Shown: positions 5,788 to 62,399 of the stretch, one piece after another
Layout of the letters: each line of letters opens with the position of its first letter
Position numbering within the stretch: position 1 is the stretch's first letter
NCBI RefSeq assembly: GCF_021028975.2
Contig: NC_059438.1
Span: forward strand, 28,272,001 to 28,336,000
Length of the DNA: 64,000 bases
Reading direction: 5' to 3'
Source: Sphaerodactylus townsendi
Taxonomy: Eukaryota
The notes under the pieces: model-generated
What the model saw: the letters and a program-made list of their open reading frames with translations, nothing else
What the model was told of the DNA's origin: nothing
Database searches by the model: none
Program-made: the position numbers and the translations under genes

Positions 5788-6022
5788 GTGCACAGATGTG
5801 CCAAGTTGTTTTTGCCTCAGTCGGTGCCACTTTTCAACAAAGTCTCACAACTTTGTCTCTGTATGAAGGGCCGCTTTCCCTCAATTATTGAGCCACCCAC
5901 AACTTTCTTCCTCAACAGTTGTATGCAACATGGAAATTGCCTTCATTGTCAGAACATCCCCACCCTTTCCATAACATCCCAGTGTGATGCTGCTCTCTCT
6001 AAGTAAGCTGGAAACATACTGG

Positions 6023-6200
6023 GGAAGTCAGTGTGGTGCAGTGGTTAAGACTGGGATCAGGAGCATTCAGGTTCAAGCCCTCACCTTACTGTGAAGATAG
6101 GTGGGTGATTCTGGGCAAGTTGTTTTCTCTCAGCTTCAGCTACCTCACAAGGTTGTTGTGAGAATACAAGGAAAGGGAGAGCATGTAATGCAGGTAGGTA
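6023..6200 (+). mobile_element. Older Squam3-like SINE followed by an (AG)n microsatellite
   Basis: gtgtggtgcagtggttaaga head, cctcacaaggttgttgtgag body. Confidence 0.6.
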
Positions 6201-6834
6201 CAATGCACAATACAGAGAGAGAGAGAGAGAGAGAGGAAGTAATAGTGAGCTTGAGGCAGATGGGAGATAAACGTGGTAAATAGATAACGGTGCGCTGGAT
6301 CCAATGAGCAAAAGGAGTTAAACGTGCAATAGCAAGAAGTAACAGTGCACCAGAGAGTAAGAATGTACTAGCTAGCAAGGAGCAGAGGTGCCCAATAGCC
6401 CATGCTAACAGACTTGGAGAAAAATGTCCTCTCCCTTTAATAGAACATGCGGCGTTTTTTACTATTATTATTTACTCATTTGTGTGTCCATAAAGTGCTT
6501 CAAGTCGCAGCTGACATATGGGATTTCCAGGCAAGAGATTAGCATTCCTTGGTGGGCTCCCACCCAAATACTAACCACTAACCAGGACTGATCCTGTTTA
6601 TGAAATCTGAAGAGATCGCTAGCCTGGATCATCCAGGTCGAGACTCTTGCATGATTCTCCTCTTCTCCGCTTTATCCTCACAACAACCCCATAAGGTAGG
6701 CTAGGCTAGGAGCTGTGTGATTGTCCCCAAGTCGTCCAGCAACTTCTCTCAGAATCTAGTCCGACACGCTCCCCATTACAACTGGACGTTTTGGGTGGCG
6801 TGGAGATCCACAAACCCCCCGCTCGGCCGCCCAC

Positions 6835-6980
6835 CTCAACTCCTGCACTGTACTGCGGAGCTCGAACAGGGAGAGCGGGGCCAAGTCCTGGAGGATCTCT
6901 TCGCCCAATTCCCTCGACTCCCCCGTATAGATGCTGCCGCGGTCCGACTCCTCGTCCGTCAACAAAGGGCGGCTATCCAT
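6835..6980 (-). CDS. CCDC113: CCDC113/CFAP263 coding exon 1 (MDSRPLLTDEESD...STVQEL)
   Basis: ATG at 6980-6978; TDEES..L...V.EL resembles the mammalian N-terminus MTDDES...VEELS; donor AG|GTGGGC; phase 2 matches exon 2. Confidence 0.85.
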
Positions 6981-7093
6981 CTTTCACCCGCGCCTTCGGA
7001 CGATGCCCGTGTCCGTCACGCGTTTGGCACGTCCCCACGTTACCGAGTTGGTGCCAGCAGCGCCGGGAAACACCCAACGCGGTCCAGCAAAGC

Positions 7094-7107
7094 GTTGCCA
7101 TGGCGCC
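7094..7107. promoter_or_regulatory. RFX X-box-like site GTTGCCATGGCGCC
   Basis: 12/14 match to GTTGCCATGGCAAC, about 115 bp upstream of the ATG of the ciliary gene CCDC113. Confidence 0.65.
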
Positions 7108-7298
7108 GGTGGGTGGGCGGGGCACTGGAGCAGGCGGTGGGTCGGTTGCGCGCGCAGCAGCAGGAGACCTCCGGCGCTGAGAGGGTCACTGCGCCCGCGC
7201 GCGGGCCGGTGGGCGAGTTGGTTGCGCGCGCAATCCGGAGGAGTCTTTTGACGCTCAAAGGATGGGGAACGGGCGTGAGTGCTGGAGGGGCGAGCTAG

Positions 7299-7796
<498 letters not shown>

Positions 7797-8036
7797 TAAG
7801 CAGAAGAAGGGGCGGGCGGGCTCTCCCCCCGGGGCCGGGGCTGCCTCCTTTCAGCCGACCGGCCCCCAGTGGGCGCGTGCTCCAGTGAACCGGCTCTTCC
7901 TTCCCGAGCTTGCAGGCTCTATTTTCTGCTCCCCGCCCCGAAATGTTGCATTCGCACAATTGCACCTTCTGCTTCCTCTTTCTGCCCAGGCAAAGGGAGC
8001 TCCACGGCTGGATGCTGGGAGGAGGCCGCGTCGATG

Positions 8037-46399: not shown

Positions 46400-47110
46400 G
46401 ACAAGACCCGAAAGGAGTTCACAAAGCGACCCTTCCGCTAGGCTGGACCAGGCCTGAGGGAACCGACGGTGCGACCACCAAGCCACGCCCTCAGTCCCCT
46501 CTCTCATGCGTACTGTTCTCTATTGCGCCTGCGCGTTTGAATGAGCGAGGCCTTCTCCGTGGCGACCCAGAGCGATGCGCCAAGGGGGCGGGGTCCTGGC
46601 AACGGACTCCAGCCAGCTCTTTCGCCAGCCTCCCCGTCGCCTTGGAAGCACGCACGCGTCGCGACAACACTCGCCGGGGGAACGAGTTCCGGCAGAAAAA
46701 TAGTCCGTTCCGGGGCAGCGGCTGCTGGTGGCGTTGTGACGGGGAAGCGGAGCGGTCTCGGTTTTGTTCGGCAGTGCGCACGCGTCCGCGTCTCCTTCCG
46801 CGCGGCGCCTGAGGGCTGAGAGCGAGACGGCCGCGCTCGGCGGCAGCAGCAGCCCGCGCGGAGCCACCCCCTCGGCCCGGCTTGGCTCGGCGGGATGTTC
46901 AAGAACACGTTCCAGAGCGGCTTCCTGTCCATCCTCTACAGTATCGGGAGCAAACCGCTGCAGATCTGGGACAAGAAGGTGGCTGTGGGGGGGCGGGGGC
47001 GGGAACCGTGGTCTCCGTTAGCTGCTGCTGGAAAACAAGTTTCTGTCCCTCATGAAGGTTGTGGCGGGGGGCTGGGGGTTGTTGCCTCAGTTTCCTCCTG
47101 GCGCGGCTTT
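46400..47110 (+). promoter_or_regulatory. CFAP20 CpG-island promoter with NRF1-like site (46524-46534) and several degenerate X-boxes
   Basis: CpG-dense; TGCGCCTGCGC; TTCTCCGTGGCGAC, CCTGGCAAC, GTCGCCTTGGAAGC, GTCGCGACAAC. Confidence 0.8.
46895..46978 (+). CDS. CFAP20: CFAP20 exon 1 ([28 protein letters not shown])
   Basis: Invariant CFAP20/BUG22 N-terminus; 84 nt. Confidence 0.98.
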
Positions 47111-47449
47111 TTCTACAGCTGTCAGGCTCCCTAAGTGCCCTGGCCTTGCATGCTTCTCTGCTGCAAAAGCTGGACGCTCCAGATCGAGCCGGGCTTGGGG
47201 AGGGGACAGACGAGGTAGACGTGCCTGAGGCTGTGCCCCTTGCTGTGTAGGACGAGAGTTTGCTTGGCGTGCATTTGTAGTTTCATGTCCCTCTCTTCTG
47301 CTCTGGAGGCAGACTGGGTATATTGGTGCTCCTCCACTCTGGCAGGTGCTCTGCATCATCTTAACCCTGAGCCGATCTGGGGTGTCTCGCTTTTGCAGCT
47401 AGCTAATCCAGCCTCTGTCATACAATGACCTCCCTGTGTAGGGTCTCTT

Positions 47450-51556: not shown

Positions 51557-51745
51557 GTGCTGGATGATAAAAATGTGCGCCGGCGATTCCGTGCCAGCAA
51601 CTACCAGAGCACAACCCGTGTGAAGCCCTTCATCTGCACCATGCCCATGCGGCTGGATGATGGCTGGAATCAGATTCAGTTCAACCTGTCCGACTTCACT
51701 CGCCGAGCGTACGGCACCAACTACATTGAGACCCTGAGAGTGCAG
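51557..51745 (+). CDS. CFAP20: CFAP20 exon 4 ([25 protein letters not shown]...YIETLRVQ)
   Basis: 189 nt, AG/GT boundaries. Confidence 0.98.
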
Positions 51746-51750
51746 GTGAG

Positions 51751-52853
51751 AACATAAGAACATAAGAACAAGCCAGCTGGATCAGACCAAAGTCCATCTA
51801 GTCCAGCTCTCTGCTACTCGCAGTGGCCCACCAGGTGCCTTTGGGAGCGCACATGTAGGATGTGAACGCAATGGCCTTCTGCGGCTGTTGCTCCCGATCA
51901 CCTGGTCTGTTAAGGCATTTGCAATCTCAGATCAAAGAGGATCAAGATTGGTAACCATAAATCAACTTCTCCTCCATAAATCTGTCCAAGCCCCTTTTAA
52001 AGCTATCCAGGTTAGTGGCCATCACCACCTCCTGTGGCAGCATATTCCAAACACCAATCACACATTGCGTGAAGAAGTGTTTCCTTTTATTAGTCCTAAT
52101 TCTTCCCCCCAGCATTTTCAATGAATGCCCCCTGGTTCTAGTATTGTGAGAAAGAGAGAAAAATTTCTCTCTGTCAACATTGTCTACCCCATGCATAATT
52201 TTGTAGACTTCAATCATATCCCCCCTCAGCCGCCTCCTCTCCAAACTAAAGAGTCCCAAACGCTGCAGCCTCTCCTCATAGGGAAGGTGCTCCAGTCCCT
52301 CAATCATCCTTGTTGCCCTTCTCTGCACTTTTTCTATCTCCTCAATATCCTTTTTGAGATGCCGCGACCAGAACTGGACACAGTACTCCAAGTGCGGTCG
52401 CACCACTGCTTTATATAAGGGCATGACAATCTTTGCAGTTTTATTATCAATTCCTTTTCTAATGATTCCCAGCATAGAGTTTGCCTTTTTCACAGCTGCC
52501 ATGCATTGAGTTGACATTCCCATGGAACTATCAACTAAGACGCCTAAATCCCTTTCCTGGTCTGTGACTGATAGCACTGACCCCTGTAGCGTGTATGTGA
52601 AGTTTGGATTTTTTGCCCCTATGTGCATCACTTTACATCTTGCTACATTGAACTGCATTTGCCATTTCTGAGCCCACTCACCTAATTTATCAAGGTCCGC
52701 TTGGAGCTCTTCGCAATCCTTTGTGGTTCTCACCACCCTACATAATTTGGTATCATCTGCAAACTTGGCCACCACGCTACCCACCCCTACTTCCAGGTCA
52801 TTTATGAATAAGTTAAAGAGCACTGGTCCCAAAACGGATCCTTGGGGGACACC
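51751..52853 (-). mobile_element. 5'-truncated young CR1 LINE (ORF2 RT C-terminal part, 3'UTR and (TTATGTTC)-type microsatellite tail)
   Basis: Open frame 52853-51942 with GVPQGSVLGP, KFADDTKL, VRPHLEYCVQFW, RRLRGDMIEVYK; tail reads agaacata repeats on +. Confidence 0.96.
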
Positions 52854-53541: not shown

Positions 53542-53652
53542 ATCCATGCAAACTGTCGCATCCGCAGAATTTACTTCTCAGACAGGCTGTACTCAGAGGA
53601 TGAGCTTCCAGCTGAGTTCAAGTTGTACATCCCTGTCCAAAACAAGGCCAAG
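53542..53652 (+). CDS. CFAP20: CFAP20 exon 5 ([37 protein letters not shown])
   Basis: 111 nt, AG/GT boundaries. Confidence 0.98.
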
Positions 53653-57230: not shown

Positions 57231-58164
57231 CTCATAAATGTACCTGTGGATCTGGTTGCCATTCTTTTCTCTGGAGATTGCAAAGGAGGACAAATTGTTT
57301 AACTGTATCTGTTGTTCTTGAACGTCCTTGTGACAGTTGCTGGTTATCCTGCAGGATGGGCTAAGAGAAGATCTGGGTAGGCAGATGCTGTTCTCCCCCC
57401 CCCCCCTAAACACTGTATGACCATGCTCCTCGACTCCTTGAAGCTGGCAGAGACACCAAAAGGATCCTCATCATAGATGACCACTTGAAGAGCATAAGCT
57501 ACAGGTGAGCAGCCTGTTCTTTTAAGAAGGAAATGGATTGTACTACTTCTTAGTCTCCGTGCATCACACAGATGTGCTTTGCACCTGTGCCAAGCTACAA
57601 CTTGGAAACCTCTACAGTTGCGCTTTTAGGTGCCAGTTTAGATGATGCACATGCAGACAGAAAAGGAGTCACATCTTATTCAGCTCCTTTGAGTCTGCTG
57701 CAACAGCAGCACTGTTTAGGAACTTCTCCAGAGCTATCTTCTTCGGAGCCAATTTTTCATGCAAATTAAGACATATTTTGCATGGACGTGCTTCAACTGT
57801 TGGGGCCAGTTTCTTAATTTGTTCTATAGCCCTGTCTCTTATGGAAAAGGATTTTGGATAGATGAACATCCAGGAATACCAATACAAGAAGGTTTCTTTT
57901 GGACCCAGGGTTTCTGGGAAAGGGAGGAGATCCCTGGGATGAAGAGAAACCGGGGTGGACAAAACTGATATAAATCTGCACTTCCTGGGACTGAAAAAAG
58001 ACCTATATAGTCTACCACAAAGCTGTTCCCAAAAGCCCCCCTCCCACACCAATGTAGAGTCTCTGGCATTCACTGACAGAGCAACTCAACTTTGCTAGAT
58101 TGGTCTCTTCCCTCTGTTTGCAGGAAAAGCAGAATTCTGCAGGCATCTGTTCCTGGCAGGGAAA

Positions 58165-58495
58165 ACTTATTTATATTTTATTTATTTATTTATTACATTT
58201 ATATACCGCCCTCCCCTGAAGGGCTCAGGGCGGTGAACATGAATATACAACTAGAGCACAAAATAAAATCAATAAATCTCAGATCATTAAATAAATCATA
58301 GTAAATGGCTCTATAGTCTTTGAATCATTAAAACCCCATTAAAAGCAGCGTATTAATATCAAATACAATAAATAATACAATAAGAGGCGACCTACTAACC
58401 AATCCCCTAAAAGAGGGGAGGGACGGCAGGATCCACAGATGTTAACGGGGGGGGGGGGCATCAGCGGCCAGCCTCCCCAAAAGCCTGGCAGGCTG
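58165..58495 (-). mobile_element. L2-type LINE 3' end (similar copy near 39650-39860)
   Basis: (TTTA)n tail then tttatataccgccctcccctgaagggctcagggcgg. Confidence 0.6.
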
Positions 58496-58871
58496 AAGGT
58501 TGGCTGGCTGGTCGGTTTTGGCCCAGGCCATGGAAGCAGCTGCAAGGAGCAGAATGGCAGCAAGAGCCTTCCAATACTTATGCTTTTCCACAGCTTCAAA
58601 TTCAGAAACCACAACCAAAGTGCAAATGATGTGCAGTGCCAGAATGATTGGCAACCTCTGTTGTTCCTCTGGATGCCTGCAGGGGTTGCTCAGGGGCGTA
58701 AGGAGACAAACTGGAGCCCTGGGCAAAACCTGAGTTGGATGCCAGCCCCCAAGGGCGGCCACCCCATCACAACCCCCCAATTTTTTTTTACGCACCAGGT
58801 CATTGGTGCCTGCAGGGGATGCATTTTTAGACATATCTGCACCAAAATGACATATCAGCACAAAGAATGCT

Positions 58872-59790
58872 GCTGGGGACGCCGCTGCCCTCCAGTGGCC
58901 AAAGGTGTGAATTACAAGCGCAACACACACCTCAACCCACGCGGCATTTCTCAGGTTATAGTTGCTATAATGTGGCGAATCGGGGCCTCTTTGAGCAGGG
59001 CAGCCCGTTTGGGCAATGCAGCTGAGAGCCCTTCGCACGAGGCCCCAGGTCGAGGCTGTGGCGTGTCCGAGCCTCTTTGGGCAGGGGAGCCGCTGGGATG
59101 CTGCTGCCCTCCAGTGGCCAAAGGTGTGAATTACAAGCGCAACCCCTGGCACCCACCACGCGGCATTTCTCAGGTTATAGTTGCTATAATGTGGCGAATC
59201 GGGACCTCTTTGAGCAGGGGAGCCGCTGCGGAGGGCTCCCCGAGAGCGTGGGGACGCTTCCCGAGTTTTTGCTGAGACCACGCTAACCCGCTCCGAGAGC
59301 GTTGTAACGCTCGCCGAGACAGCTCTAACACTCTCCAAGAGCGTGGTAAGGCTTTTCCCGAGAGCGTTGTAACGCCTCCTAGACCGTGCTAACCTTCTCC
59401 GAGAGCGTGGTAAGCCCTCCCGACAGCGTTGTGACGCTCCCGAGACCGCGCTAATGCGCCCCAGAGAGCGTTGTAACGCTTCCCATGAGCGTTGTGACGC
59501 TCTCCGAGAAGCGTTCCCACGCTCTCAGGGAACACTCCGCAGTGGCTCCCCTGCTCAAAGAGGCCTCGATTCACCACATTATAGCAACTATAACCTGAGA
59601 AATGCCGCGTGGGTTGGGGTGTGCGCTTGTAATTCACACTTTGGCCACTGGAGGGCAGCGGCGTCCCCAGCGGCTCCCCTGCCCAAAGAGGCTCGGACAC
59701 GCCACAACCTCGACGTGGGGTCTCGTGCGAAGGTGGCGCCCTAGGGACTCTCAGCTACATTGCCCAAACGGGCTGCCAAGCTCAAAGAGG
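58872..59790. repeat. Composite CpG-rich repeat: 219-bp direct repeat, about 280-bp inverted arms (58986-59263 / 59505-59790) and a 21-bp minisatellite spacer
   Basis: Directly visible: gctgccctccagtggccaaaggtgtgaattacaagcgc at 58884 and 59103 and its reverse complement at 59622-59659; spacer units ccgagagcgttgtaacgct.. Confidence 0.93.
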
Positions 59791-59799
59791 TCTGGGAAG

Positions 59800-60300
59800 A
59801 TAGCGTAATCACCCCATAACATCCACGTGCGGTCTCGTGCGAAGGCGGCGGTCAGCGTGGCGTGGTCCAGGGGAGGGACGGGGGGAGCACTGTGGGGCAG
59901 ATTCTCCTCAGCTGCGGCACCCCATCAGGACGTGCGGGGGAAGGGGGGTCCCGGGGGAGCCAGGCCAAGTTGGGGGGGGGCATTTGAAGCCAATGATGGG
60001 ACCCCTCCCTCCCTCCCTCCCCGTCGCCTCCGGGGTGACGAGTCCCGAGAGAGCGCGCCGATTGGGCCGCCGCCTTTCCTCCTCCTCCTCCCGCTTGATT
60101 GGCCGGCGGGCCGTAAAGGCGGAAGCGTTCAGGGGGGCCCGTGAGCGAAGCGGCCGGCGGGGAGAAGGAGGAGGGGGCCCTTCTGCAGGGTCGTCGTCGT
60201 CGGTGGGGGGACTCTGGCCGCCCTCCCTCTCTCCCTCGCTGGCCCTGATGGACGGGGAGGGGCTGTCCGTCGCTGCCTGCTTTTCTATGCCAGGCAAGTG
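59800..60300 (+). promoter_or_regulatory. CpG-island promoter and probable first exon of an unidentified gene
   Basis: CCAAT at 59990, ATTGG at 60061 and 60098, GGCGGAAG (ETS-like) at 60118, candidate donors at 60294/60298. Confidence 0.6.
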
Positions 60301-60351
60301 AGGCAGACAGAAATGAAGCAGGCAGATCCTGACAGCTCAGTTGGTTCGTTC

Positions 60352-60352
60352 G

Positions 60353-60384
<32 letters not shown>

Positions 60385-60386
60385 CC
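60352..60386. repeat. (GCCT)n microsatellite
   Basis: About 8 tandem GCCT units. Confidence 0.9.
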
Positions 60387-60469
60387 AGGGCGGAAGGCCA
60401 GAGGAATGGATCCAGTGGGATTTCAGAATGCTTTGGGGGAGAATATGAATGGTAACTCTGGAGGGAGGG

Positions 60470-60935
60470 AAGAAGAAGAGTTGGTTTTTATAACCCGCCA
60501 ATGTGGTGTAGTGGTTAGGAGCAGCAGACTGTCATCTGGAGAACTGGATTTGACTCCCTGCTGCTTCACATGAGTGGCTGACTCTAATCTGGTGAACTGG
60601 GTTTGTTTTCCCTGCTCCTCCACTGAAGCCTGCTGGGTGACCTTGGGCTAGTCACAGTTCTCTCAGAACTCTCTCAGCCCCACCTGCCTCACAAGGTGCC
60701 CCTTGTGAGGAAGGTGATTGTAAGCCCCTTTGAGGCTCCTTAAAGGTAGAGAAAAGTCTTGAAGCAGCTTACCTTCCGCTCCCTGCAAGAGGCACCTTGT
60801 GAGGAAGGTGGGGCTCAGACAGTTCTGAGAGATCATTGACTAAGCCAAGGTCACCAAACAGACTTCATGTGGAGGAGGGGGGGGGATCGAACCTGGTTTT
60901 CCAGATTAGACTCTGCCACTCTTAACCACCACACT
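60470..60935. mobile_element. Two Squam3-type SINEs, a plus-strand copy (about 60500-60760) nested in a minus-strand copy
   Basis: (GAA)n tail at 60469, then tgtggtgtagtggttagg head on +, then minus body and head ending cttaaccaccacacta. Confidence 0.75.
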
Positions 60936-62399
60936 AGGTTGGCTTTCTGGCTCCACCTTGGACTGCTGTTAAATGTTCAGGGGCAGAGACGTAAGATTTC
61001 AAGACATTTTGAAGTAGTCTTCCAGATCCTTTTGGAAACAATGGAAATTGGGGAGGGGGGTGGGATTGAAATATGCATAATACTGATTAAATCCTAACTT
61101 ACATTTTCTGTTTGAACTAACATAATATCAATAATTTATGTGGCAACATATAAAATTGTGCTACACATCATCTTTGGGGAGAGGGAGAGAAAGAGGGCAA
61201 GACCTATCCCGTTAAAACAGATACAAAGGGGAAAAATTGAAATAGGTTGGAAACAGGAATCAAATTTTGCAGCAAATAAAGGAGACAGTATCATTTGGAC
61301 AGACGTGGTCTCATACCTAACAGTATTTACTCAAATGCAAGACAGGCTTATTTTCACAGAGATGCAATAAAAAAGTGGAGAACAATCTTACATTGTTCCA
61401 GGCATATATAATTATTCTGTTTTTTCTTTGTGTATAACATTTTTAAGGGGATGGTCTTGCATGCAATGCCATGTTCCTTTAGAAGAAACGGAGCATTTGG
61501 AAATCAAGCTGAATTTTGTCAACAATGAAAACACAACGAACCCTTCAATGACATATCATCATCATAGCATTCTTTGTATCAATTGTGAACAAAATTAGCT
61601 ACGCGTGAACAATAAACACATCCTTGAAATTGCATAGGTTTATATTATGTACTGCATTGATCATTGCTATCATTATTTGCTTGACTAGGGATACCAGCCC
61701 CCAAGTGAGATTGAAGGATTCCCTGGAATTGCAGGTCATCTCTACACACACACACCCGCCCCCGCCAGTGGCCACGGAGGACCAGGAAACCATATTTGCC
61801 TCAGCAAAAATGTTAACACTACGTGTTTCAACTGAACATAATCTTGCCTAAAAACTGTTCTCTCATTCCAATAAAGGGAGGGTTTGTGGGGAGGTATCTG
61901 TCCCCAATTTCCAATTTTCCCGTTTCAGGAAGTACTCTCTTTTCTCCAGAGGAGTCTTTTTTCCCCACACGGACCTTACTTCACATCTGTACTCAGACAA
62001 TAAACTGGATTGCACCCAAGTATCCATTGCCACTCCCTATCAAAGCCCTGGTCCACTGTTCATAGAGCACCTGAAAAGACAGGTTCCAAATCAAAAAGAA
62101 AACATCACAGATACCTCTGAAGTGACTGTGACAGCCACGAGAAAGGCATATTCTGCATTACTGAATCTCTTTCAGCCCAATTTTTCAGAGTAGTTTAGAA
62201 TTTGACAGCACTTCAGTCGAGGTCTTCCCCTCCTTTGTGACGGTGATTCATTTATTAACTGGGTGGGGTTTTTTGCATAATTCTTAACTGATCAGATTAT
62301 CTGATCCAGTCTGACTGGCGCCATCTTGTCATTTTTTTCATGGCTAGTTTTGGACTGATGCCGACAGGATTCTAGGGGCTGCAAATGCGGCCAGCTACA

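What the first reader, a model, noticed from the sequence alone, without database searches (positions are those of the whole stretch)
58884..59659. Three extended CTCF-like motifs in divergent (< < >) orientation: candidate insulator generated by duplication plus inversion
Seen: TGGCCACTGGAGGGCAGC occurs on the minus strand at 58884-58901 and 59103-59120 and on the plus strand at 59642-59659, each preceded by TGTAATTC at 7 bp (left copies) or 6 bp (right copy). Known: the CTCF core is CCASYAGRKGGCRS (one mismatch here), zinc fingers 9-11 read an upstream TGCAG/TGCAA-like module at two spacings differing by 1 bp, and divergent CTCF clusters mark loop/TAD boundaries. Inference: the palindrome builds a bidirectional, possibly methylation-sensitive boundary between CFAP20 and the next promoter. 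Weaker motifs lie at about 59727 (GCGAAGGTGGCGCC) and 59838.
Basis: partly seen in the sequence, partly recalled or inferred. Interest (0 to 1): 0.78.

Follow-up and report, generated by a model that had tools for sequence, protein, structure and literature searches.

The report
Repeat-built palindrome carrying CTCF-like motifs
Three identical, strong matches to the CTCF binding motif do sit downstream of CFAP20, pointing away from each other. They are copies of one segment of a repeat family present in many copies in this lizard genome, folded into a ~0.8-kb palindrome, so the layout comes from repeat architecture and any insulator role is untested.

Summary
TGGCCACTGGAGGGCAGC occurs exactly three times, at 58884-58901 (-), 59103-59120 (-) and 59642-59659 (+), each with TGTAATTC 7, 7 and 6 bp upstream.

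They are the three best sites in the 64-kb window.

The sites are not independent. Each lies in a 137-bp unit (U1) that alternates with an ~90-bp unit (U2) in a 219-bp period. About 1.5-2 periods stand inverted on each side of a 21-bp hairpin-unit minisatellite. The imperfect palindrome spans 58986-59790, with arms 93% identical, plus one extra unit on the left.

In read-derived contigs under three species labels, the arms are laid about 60-430 times deeper than the unique flanks. The centre is only about 4-12 times deeper. The units therefore belong to a dispersed repeat family.

The two "weaker motifs" score negative. The core holds no CpG. The upstream module matches 6 of 10 positions at canonical spacing. 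The "next promoter" is unverified. CTCF binding is plausible but insulation is untested.

The scan has noted similar CpG-rich foldbacks and CTCF-bearing transposon modules elsewhere in this genome.

The parts
58883..58901 (-). CTCF-like core motif, copy 1 (19-mer TGGCCACTGGAGGGCAGCG). It lies in unit A1, outside the palindrome stem.
   Evidence: Exact match; 18.2 bits
59102..59120 (-). CTCF-like core motif, copy 2 (TGGCCACTGGAGGGCAGCA), in unit A2 of the left arm
   Evidence: Exact match; 18.8 bits
59642..59660 (+). CTCF-like core motif, copy 3, in unit A3 of the right arm
   Evidence: Exact match; 18.2 bits
58909..58916 (-). TGTAATTC, a candidate upstream (ZF9-11) module of copy 1. The same 8-mer lies at 59128-59135 (-) and 59628-59635 (+).
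   Evidence: Sequence read. The 10-mer TTGTAATTCA matches 6/10 of the CTGCAGTTCC-like consensus quoted in PMC12885311. The linker before TGG is 6 bp in the left copies and 5 bp in the right copy.
58869..59005 (+). Repeat unit U1, copy A1 (137 bp): an extra tandem unit to the left of the palindrome
   Evidence: Direct repeat D4, 90% to A2; alignment; nhmmer E 1e-48
59006..59094 (+). Repeat unit U2 (modules C+B), left arm
   Evidence: Inverted repeats I3 and I4, 96% and 91%; nhmmer
59088..59263 (+). Repeat unit U1, copy A2, plus the inner end of the left arm
   Evidence: Inverted repeat I1, 108 nt at 92%
59284..59526 (.). Central minisatellite: 21-bp units (11.5 copies, with a 64-bp super-period). 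Many units form an 8-bp-stem hairpin, AGAGCGTT-GT-AACGCTCT. CpG o/e is 1.23. The array is nearly locus-specific.
   Evidence: TRF; D1-D3; depth only about 4-12x the flanks, and an X4 contig spans 59222-59571; CpG
59505..59674 (-). Repeat unit U1, copy A3, plus the inner end of the right arm
   Evidence: I1, I2, I6; nhmmer E 2e-44
59670..59770 (-). Repeat unit U2, right arm (B', C')
   Evidence: I3, I4; nhmmer E 5e-34
59771..59850 (-). Diverged further unit (degenerate U1 tail plus B''); it lacks the CTCF-like motif
   Evidence: D8, 85% to 59698-59738; nhmmer U2 E 9e-7; alignment
58986..59790 (.). The imperfect palindrome proper: arms 58986-59263 and 59505-59790, 93.4% identical, with a 241-bp spacer
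   Evidence: Global alignment of the arms; single-strand DNA fold gives one long hairpin, -406.7 kcal/mol
59791..60313 (.). It appears multi-copy, and its promoter status is unverified.
   Evidence: Sequence; CpG statistics; contig depth about 105-330x the flanks, then a drop to unique level at 60314, with no strand-specific RNA

Best explanation
The locus is a CpG-rich foldback built from a dispersed repeat family. It is not a one-off regulatory construction.

A 137-bp unit (U1) contains the CTCF-like core and its TGTAATTC neighbour. It alternates with an ~90-bp unit (U2) in a 219-bp period. One and a half to two periods stand in inverted orientation on either side of a 21-bp minisatellite whose units are themselves small hairpins.

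The three motifs and their < < > layout follow mechanically from that structure: two tandem U1 copies on the left and one inverted U1 copy on the right.

Shown here:
- the anatomy;
- that the arms are multi-copy in the genome;
- that the centre is near-unique;
- that the centre and its junctions with both inner arms stand in contigs of other read sets;
- that the PWM match is strong.

Inferred:
- The palindrome arose either as a foldback-type mobile element with a variable centre, or by fold-back (hairpin-primed) inverted duplication at the palindromic 21-bp array inside a copy of the family.
- Because the core match is strong and the block has CpG-island composition (young, or hypomethylated in the germline), CTCF may well bind at least one of the sites. 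I put this at about 40-50%. If bound, the left sites would face the CSNK2A2/CFAP20 side and the right site the other side.
- A real insulating effect is possible but unproven. I put this at about 15-20%.
For: - Repeat anatomy. The arms are 93.4% identical, the period is 219 bp, and there is a central 21-bp array.
- Dispersed family: in run X1 the unique flanks have summed word depth 30-36. The arm bins reach 3,837 (58974-59107), 8,756 (59108-59241), 1,941 (59510-59643) and 13,290 (59644-59777). The centre bins reach only 381 and 126. Runs X4 and X5 show the same profile.
- At several arm positions every laid contig carries a letter different from the window, for example 59806 T>G in 23 contigs and 59204 A>G in 9 contigs. 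These contigs are therefore other copies.
- One contig repeats 59770-59850 in tandem with 35 other letters between, so the units also form arrays at other loci.
- Not an assembly artefact: an X4 contig spans 59222-59571 with 3 differences, and X1 contigs tile 59222-59601.
- The centre is also covered in X5, whose flanks differ by about 2-4%, so the structure predates that split.
- PWM strength.
- CpG o/e is 0.85 against 0.16-0.19 in the flanks.
- Scan notes report other CpG-rich foldbacks with multi-copy arms in this genome. These are leads only.
Against: - No terminal inverted-repeat ends or target-site duplication could be identified around the block, so mobility is not demonstrated.
- No second copy could be fetched. 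It is therefore unknown whether other family members share the foldback form or keep the motif.
- Summed contig depth is only a rough proxy for copy number, as the tool itself warns. Matching at 90% likeness may let low-complexity DNA contribute in 59912-60313.
- Retention of three identical 18-mers in arms that differ by 6-10% could reflect selection. However, a 38-bp block elsewhere in U1 (CACGCGGCATTTCTCAGGTTATAGTTGCTATAATGTGG) is equally invariant.
Confidence: 0.68

Rival explanations
1. One reading: the palindrome is a functional, bidirectional CTCF insulator or TAD-type boundary between CFAP20 and the next transcription unit. The left sites would stop cohesin arriving from the CFAP20 side and the right site cohesin arriving from the other side. 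It may have been co-opted from a repeat.
For: - The three sites are the strongest CTCF core matches in 64 kb (p about 4e-7 to 1e-6).
- The divergent orientation is the one typical of boundaries (established knowledge, not tested here).
- There is a partial upstream module at canonical 5/6-bp linkers.
- CpG-island composition suggests open, hypomethylated chromatin.
- The position is intergenic, about 3-5 kb 3' of CFAP20.
- The locus is kept in related species.
Against: - There are no occupancy or contact data.
- The motif copies come with a multi-copy repeat, and most repeat-borne motif instances in other vertebrates are unbound (my own knowledge).
- The near-invariant A at matrix position 9 is G.
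- The upstream module matches only 6/10.
- The core has no CpG, so the methylation-switch idea lacks a basis.
- The extra weak motifs fail the PWM.
- The neighbouring promoter is unverified.
Confidence: 0.17
2. The palindrome is part of a CpG-island promoter or regulatory region for an unannotated transcript that starts near 60000-60300. The repeated units would act as promoter-proximal factor-binding arrays, with CTCF only one of the candidate factors.
For: - A continuous 1.45-kb CpG-rich block runs from 58869 to 60313 (o/e 0.64-1.23).
- There are three CCAAT boxes and an ETS-like CGGAAG at 59988-60130, and a possible ATG-plus-donor at 60249-60300.
- Factor-site-like repeats are present: 6 copies of CCTCTTTGAGCAGGGGAGCC and a 21-bp palindromic array.
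Against: - RNA reads laid from one run are 99% partial matches (5,318 of 5,369), fall equally on both strands, and are absent from 60314-60447.
- The block itself appears multi-copy.
- No coding exon was recognised downstream within the window.
Confidence: 0.1
3. The palindrome is an assembly artefact, a chimeric fold-back read.
For: Palindromes are a known artefact class in long-read assemblies (my own knowledge).
Against: - The arms differ by 6.6% and by several indels.
- Short-read contigs from other samples span the centre and both inner arm junctions.
Confidence: 0.02

Closest known systems
Repeat-borne CTCF motifs, e.g. SINE B2-derived CTCF sites of rodents (PMC10982698, found; wider literature from my own knowledge)
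   Same: A good CTCF core motif is part of a repeat unit and is multiplied with it. Orientation is dictated by the orientation of the repeat.
   Different: The carrier here is not a SINE. It is a CpG-rich tandem/foldback repeat of a gecko. One locus receives three sites in divergent layout at once. Binding has not been shown.
Foldback-type elements and long-inverted-repeat MITEs
   Same: Long inverted arms are built of tandem subrepeats. The arms are multi-copy and the central part is variable or unique. There is no coding capacity.
   Different: No defined termini or target-site duplication were found. It is not known whether other copies are also foldbacks.
Divergent CTCF clusters at TAD boundaries, and insulator sites with an upstream ZF9-11 module (PMC12885311)
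   Same: The motif orientation is < < >. The core has a preceding TGG, with a partial upstream module after a 5- or 6-bp linker.
   Different: All three sites lie within 780 bp and derive from one repeat. The upstream module matches only 6/10. No occupancy, cohesin or insulation data exist.
Other CpG-rich foldbacks noted by this scan in the same genome (s1-746392, s1-743037)
   Same: They are reported as roughly kilobase-sized CpG-rich palindromes whose arms occur in many copies in this gecko and its relatives.
   Different: Sequence relationship to this locus is not established: the look-up by sequence was blank.

Membership tests
Vertebrate CTCF binding site | Core motif match (CCASYAGRKGGCRS / MA0139.1) at genome-wide significance | tested here: met
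   18.2-18.8 of 26.1 bits, p 4e-7 (uniform) to 1.2e-6 (GC 60%); the top 3 sites of the window. There is one mismatch, G for the near-invariant A.
Vertebrate CTCF binding site | Upstream ZF9-11 module (CTGCAGTTCC-like) at the usual linker, for the 'extended' subclass | tested here: inconclusive
   TTGTAATTCA matches 6/10. The linker before TGG is 5 bp (right) or 6 bp (left), consistent with the spacing in PMC12885311. The chance of 6 or more matches out of 10 at a fixed place is about 0.02. The three copies count as one observation. No official extended matrix was available.
Vertebrate CTCF binding site | CpG at the methylation-sensitive core positions, for the 'methylation-sensitive' subclass | tested here: not met
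   The core CCACTGGAGGGCAGC has CA at both critical C positions (the positions are from my own knowledge of the CTCF-DNA structures). The nearest CpGs lie in the flanks only.
Vertebrate CTCF binding site | In vivo occupancy by CTCF | not testable with these tools
   No ChIP or CUT&Tag data are accessible.
Insulator / TAD boundary | Divergent motif orientation | tested here: met
   The strands are -, -, +.
Insulator / TAD boundary | Cohesin retention, an insulation minimum, and enhancer blocking | not testable with these tools
   No Hi-C or functional data are available.
Dispersed repeat / transposable element | Many copies elsewhere in the genome | tested here: met
   Arm bins are laid about 60-430 times deeper than the unique flanks in three runs. 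Up to 23 distinct contigs at one arm position all differ from the window. The copy number is rough.
Dispersed repeat / transposable element | Defined termini (TIR or LTR ends) with a target-site duplication | tested here: not met
   No outer inverted or direct terminal repeats and no duplication were found around 58869-59850 or 58869-60313 (and reading the sequence).
Foldback element | Long inverted arms composed of tandem subrepeats around a variable centre | tested here: met
   near-unique centre depth.
Foldback element | The same foldback form recurs at other insertion sites | not testable with these tools
   No other copy could be fetched: the ORF word search, the metagenome scan and the window search were all blank.

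The most novel reading that the evidence does not exclude
The repeat family as a whole could be a carrier of ready-made divergent CTCF site pairs. In that case a CpG-rich foldback element would have seeded dozens to hundreds of boundary-type CTCF clusters across gecko genomes. This would be a squamate counterpart of the SINE-driven CTCF expansions of mammals, but one that delivers both orientations in a single insertion.
Probability: 0.1. Interest if true: 0.7.

Novelty: new member of a known kind. Interest (0 to 1): 0.3.

Why it matters
If CTCF binds here, the locus would be an example outside mammals of a repeat supplying boundary-type CTCF sites, and of a palindrome supplying both orientations at once. 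As it stands, it is a well-documented case where three motifs in a meaningful arrangement are explained by repeat architecture. That is a useful caution for motif-based calls of insulators in repeat-rich squamate genomes.

Tried and rejected
- I tried to fetch other family copies through called ORFs. A word search with the 103-aa ORF 59389-59700 (-) found 2 candidates and none significant.
- An exact-pattern scan of metagenome contigs for the extended motif found 0 hits.
- The look-up of earlier findings by sequence was blank.
- blastn at word size 9 and nhmmer profiles of U1, U2 and 59791-60313 against the window found no copy outside the locus.
- Rfam at gathering score found nothing. At E up to 1 there were only three sub-threshold miRNA-model hits in 60153-60386, so there is no hammerhead, tRNA-like or other RNA family in the palindrome. 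No tRNA was found.
- I considered an LTR reading (TG...CA ends at 58868 and 60309) and dropped it for lack of a convincing target duplication.
- I considered a classical TIR transposon and dropped it because the two outer ends are unrelated.
- I rejected an assembly artefact on the read-contig evidence.
- I rejected the weaker motifs at 59727 and 59838.

Full report
**1. The observation**

The 18-mer TGGCCACTGGAGGGCAGC is present exactly three times in the 64-kb window: at 58884-58901 (-), 59103-59120 (-) and 59642-59659 (+). No further match appears even with two mismatches, and none in 100 dinucleotide-preserving shuffles.

Reading the sequence confirms TGTAATTC at 7 bp from the two left copies (58909-58916 and 59128-59135, minus strand) and at 6 bp from the right copy (59628-59635).

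I scanned both strands of the window with the JASPAR MA0139.1 count matrix.
- The three sites score 18.2, 18.8 and 18.2 bits out of a possible 26.1. They are the three best sites of the window, and the next best scores 14.0.
- The exact p-value is about 4e-7 on a uniform background and 1.2e-6 at 60% GC.
- The only penalised position is G in place of the nearly invariant A of CCASYAG (-2.8 bits).
They are not CTCF-like.

**2. Anatomy**

The three sites are not independent events. Repeat finding, tandem-repeat finding and alignment show two unit types:
- U1 is 137 bp and carries the motif, the TGTAATTC, a variable linker and a 38-bp block that is also identical in all three copies.
- U2 is about 90 bp.
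- Both end in CCTCTTTGAGCAGGGGAGCC-like sequence, which occurs six times.

Reading towards the centre:
- The left side is U1 (A1, 58869-59005), U2 (59006-59094), then U1 (A2, 59088-59263). This gives the 219-bp period.
- The right side, reverse-complemented, is a degenerate unit without the motif (59771-59850), U2 (59670-59770), then U1 (A3, 59505-59674).

Between the arms lies a 21-bp minisatellite (59284-59526, 11.5 copies, with a 64-bp super-period). Many of its units are small hairpins, AGAGCGTT-GT-AACGCTCT.

The arms 58986-59263 and 59505-59790 align at 93.4% identity, with 13 transitions, 5 transversions and 22 gap columns. As single-stranded DNA, 58860-59860 folds into one long hairpin of -406.7 kcal/mol. 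Motif copy 1 sits in the extra left unit, outside the stem. The < < > layout is therefore two tandem U1 copies plus one inverted U1 copy.

**3. The units are a dispersed repeat family**

I laid contigs of three runs (three species labels) and raw RNA reads of a fourth on 57500-61500.

| Region (run X1) | Summed word depth |
|---|---|
| Unique flanks | 30-36 |
| 58974-59107 (arm) | 3,837 |
| 59108-59241 (arm) | 8,756 |
| 59242-59375 (centre) | 381 |
| 59376-59509 (centre) | 126 |
| 59510-59643 (arm) | 1,941 |
| 59644-59777 (arm) | 13,290 |
| 59778-59911 | 10,203 |

Runs X4 and X5 show the same profile.

At several arm positions every laid contig differs from the window: 59806 T>G in 23 contigs, 59204 A>G in 9, and 59923 C>G in 14. 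Those contigs are other copies. One contig repeats 59770-59850 in tandem with 35 other letters between, so the units form arrays elsewhere too.

The tool warns that summed depth is not a copy number. I read it only as tens to a few hundred copies at 90% likeness or more.

The centre is close to unique. An X4 contig spans it together with both inner arm junctions (59222-59571, 3 differences), and X1 contigs tile 59222-59601. This excludes an assembly artefact. X5, whose flanks differ by about 2-4%, also covers the centre, so the structure is older than that split.

No other copy lies in the window. I could not fetch copies from elsewhere. Two things therefore stay open: whether other members are also foldbacks, and whether they keep the motif. 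I found no terminal repeats or target-site duplication, so mobility is inferred, not shown.

Notes of this scan say the genome is a gecko's. They report other CpG-rich foldbacks whose arms are multi-copy, and several transposon modules with CTCF-like motifs. I use these as leads only.

**4. Context**

CFAP20 is on the + strand. Its start codon is at 46895, and its large 3' coding exon ([37 protein letters not shown]) is at about 53545-53650. The palindrome lies roughly 3-5 kb beyond the gene.

The block has CpG-island composition:
- GC is 60% and CpG o/e is 0.85 over 58869-59850.
- The centre has o/e 1.23 and the arms 0.64-0.73.
- The flanks have o/e 0.16-0.19 and the whole window 0.31.
- The block runs on into a CpG-rich stretch, 59791-60313.

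Its status is doubtful for three reasons:
- It is also laid about 105-330 times deeper than the flanks, then drops to unique level at 60314. Part of that depth may come from low-complexity runs.
- 5,318 of the 5,369 RNA reads laid are partial matches, and they fall equally on both strands.
- No RNA reads fall in 60314-60447.

The promoter is therefore unverified.

**5. The extended-motif and methylation claims**

PMC12885311 describes the upstream ZF9-11 consensus as CTGCAGTTCC- or CAGCTGTTCC-like. It reports the commonest linker as 5 bp before a frequent TGG, with variable length.

Here TTGTAATTCA matches 6 of 10 positions of CTGCAGTTCC. The linker is 5 bp in the right copy and 6 bp in the left copies. 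The spacing is canonical, but the sequence match is weak: the chance of 6 or more matches at a fixed place is about 0.02, and the three copies count as one observation.

The 15-bp core CCACTGGAGGGCAGC contains no CpG. The two cytosines known to make CTCF methylation-sensitive (my own knowledge of the structural work) are followed by A here. A direct methylation switch has no basis in the sequence.

**6. How it most likely works**

The best-supported reading is a repeat-derived CpG-rich foldback that passively carries three strong CTCF core matches.

Its origin is either a foldback-type mobile element with a variable centre, or a fold-back (hairpin-primed) inverted duplication at the palindromic 21-bp array inside a family copy. 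These two cannot be separated here.

- CTCF binding to at least one site is plausible, given the strong core and island-like composition. I put it at about 40-50%.
- A true insulating role I put at about 15-20%.
- The identical 18-mers are not evidence of selection, because another 38-bp block of U1 is equally invariant.

**7. Comparison and novelty**

The closest known kind is the repeat-borne CTCF motif, such as the SINE B2-derived sites of mice (PMC10982698), combined with foldback-type repeat architecture. This is a new instance of that kind in a squamate, not a new kind. It would become interesting if the family as a whole turned out to deliver divergent site pairs that are bound.

**8. 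Limits**

- The CTCF matrix came from memory.
- Only one laying of reads was allowed, at 134-bp bins.
- No genome-wide search of this animal's assembly was possible.

Noticed in passing
window 58164-58487: A 324-bp retroposon-like insertion with an A-rich/(TTAT)n tail at its left end, so the element is on the minus strand. It is flanked by a direct duplication CCTGGCAGG (58153-58161 and 58483-58491). A contig of run X5 (a related species) joins 58163 directly to 58488, so the insertion is absent there. RNA reads carry poly(A) loose ends at 58239.
   Followed up: partly
window 60448-60983: Two tRNA-like SINE copies lie in opposite orientation (about 60500-60700 on +, about 60790-60940 on -). 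Together they form a second inverted repeat right after the CpG-rich block. Summed contig depth reaches 8.6 million in X1, against about 30 for unique DNA, making this one of the most abundant repeats of this genome.
   Followed up: no
window 58706-58839: A short, very high-copy segment (summed depth about 730,000 in X1) around a T9 run at 58781-58789. At 58706 nearly all other copies carry G instead of A. A 133-bp-spaced direct repeat TGCCTGCAGGGG(T/A)TGC lies at 58674 and 58807.
   Followed up: no
window 60352-60386: A perfect (GCCT)n microsatellite of 8.8 copies, just 3' of the CpG-rich block. Sub-threshold miRNA-model hits there are most likely due to this simple repeat.
   Followed up: no
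window 51942-52832 (-): An intact 296-aa ORF with the C-terminal part of a CR1-type reverse transcriptase, inside CFAP20 next to the exon at about 51557-51757. This matches the scan note on a young CR1 at a CFAP20 splice donor.
   Followed up: no
window 59284-59526: The 21-bp units of the central array are near-perfect 18-bp palindromes (AGAGCGTT GT AACGCTCT) with CpG o/e 1.23. This looks like an array of sites for a dimeric DNA-binding protein, or a set of hairpin-forming units. No factor could be assigned.
   Followed up: partly
window 6001-8000 and 46400-47300: Two further CpG-rich blocks. The second is the CFAP20 promoter (GC 64%, CpG o/e 0.87). The first (GC 61%) is presumably the promoter of the upstream gene on the same strand, which would be CSNK2A2 if synteny with human holds. 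This was not checked.
   Followed up: no
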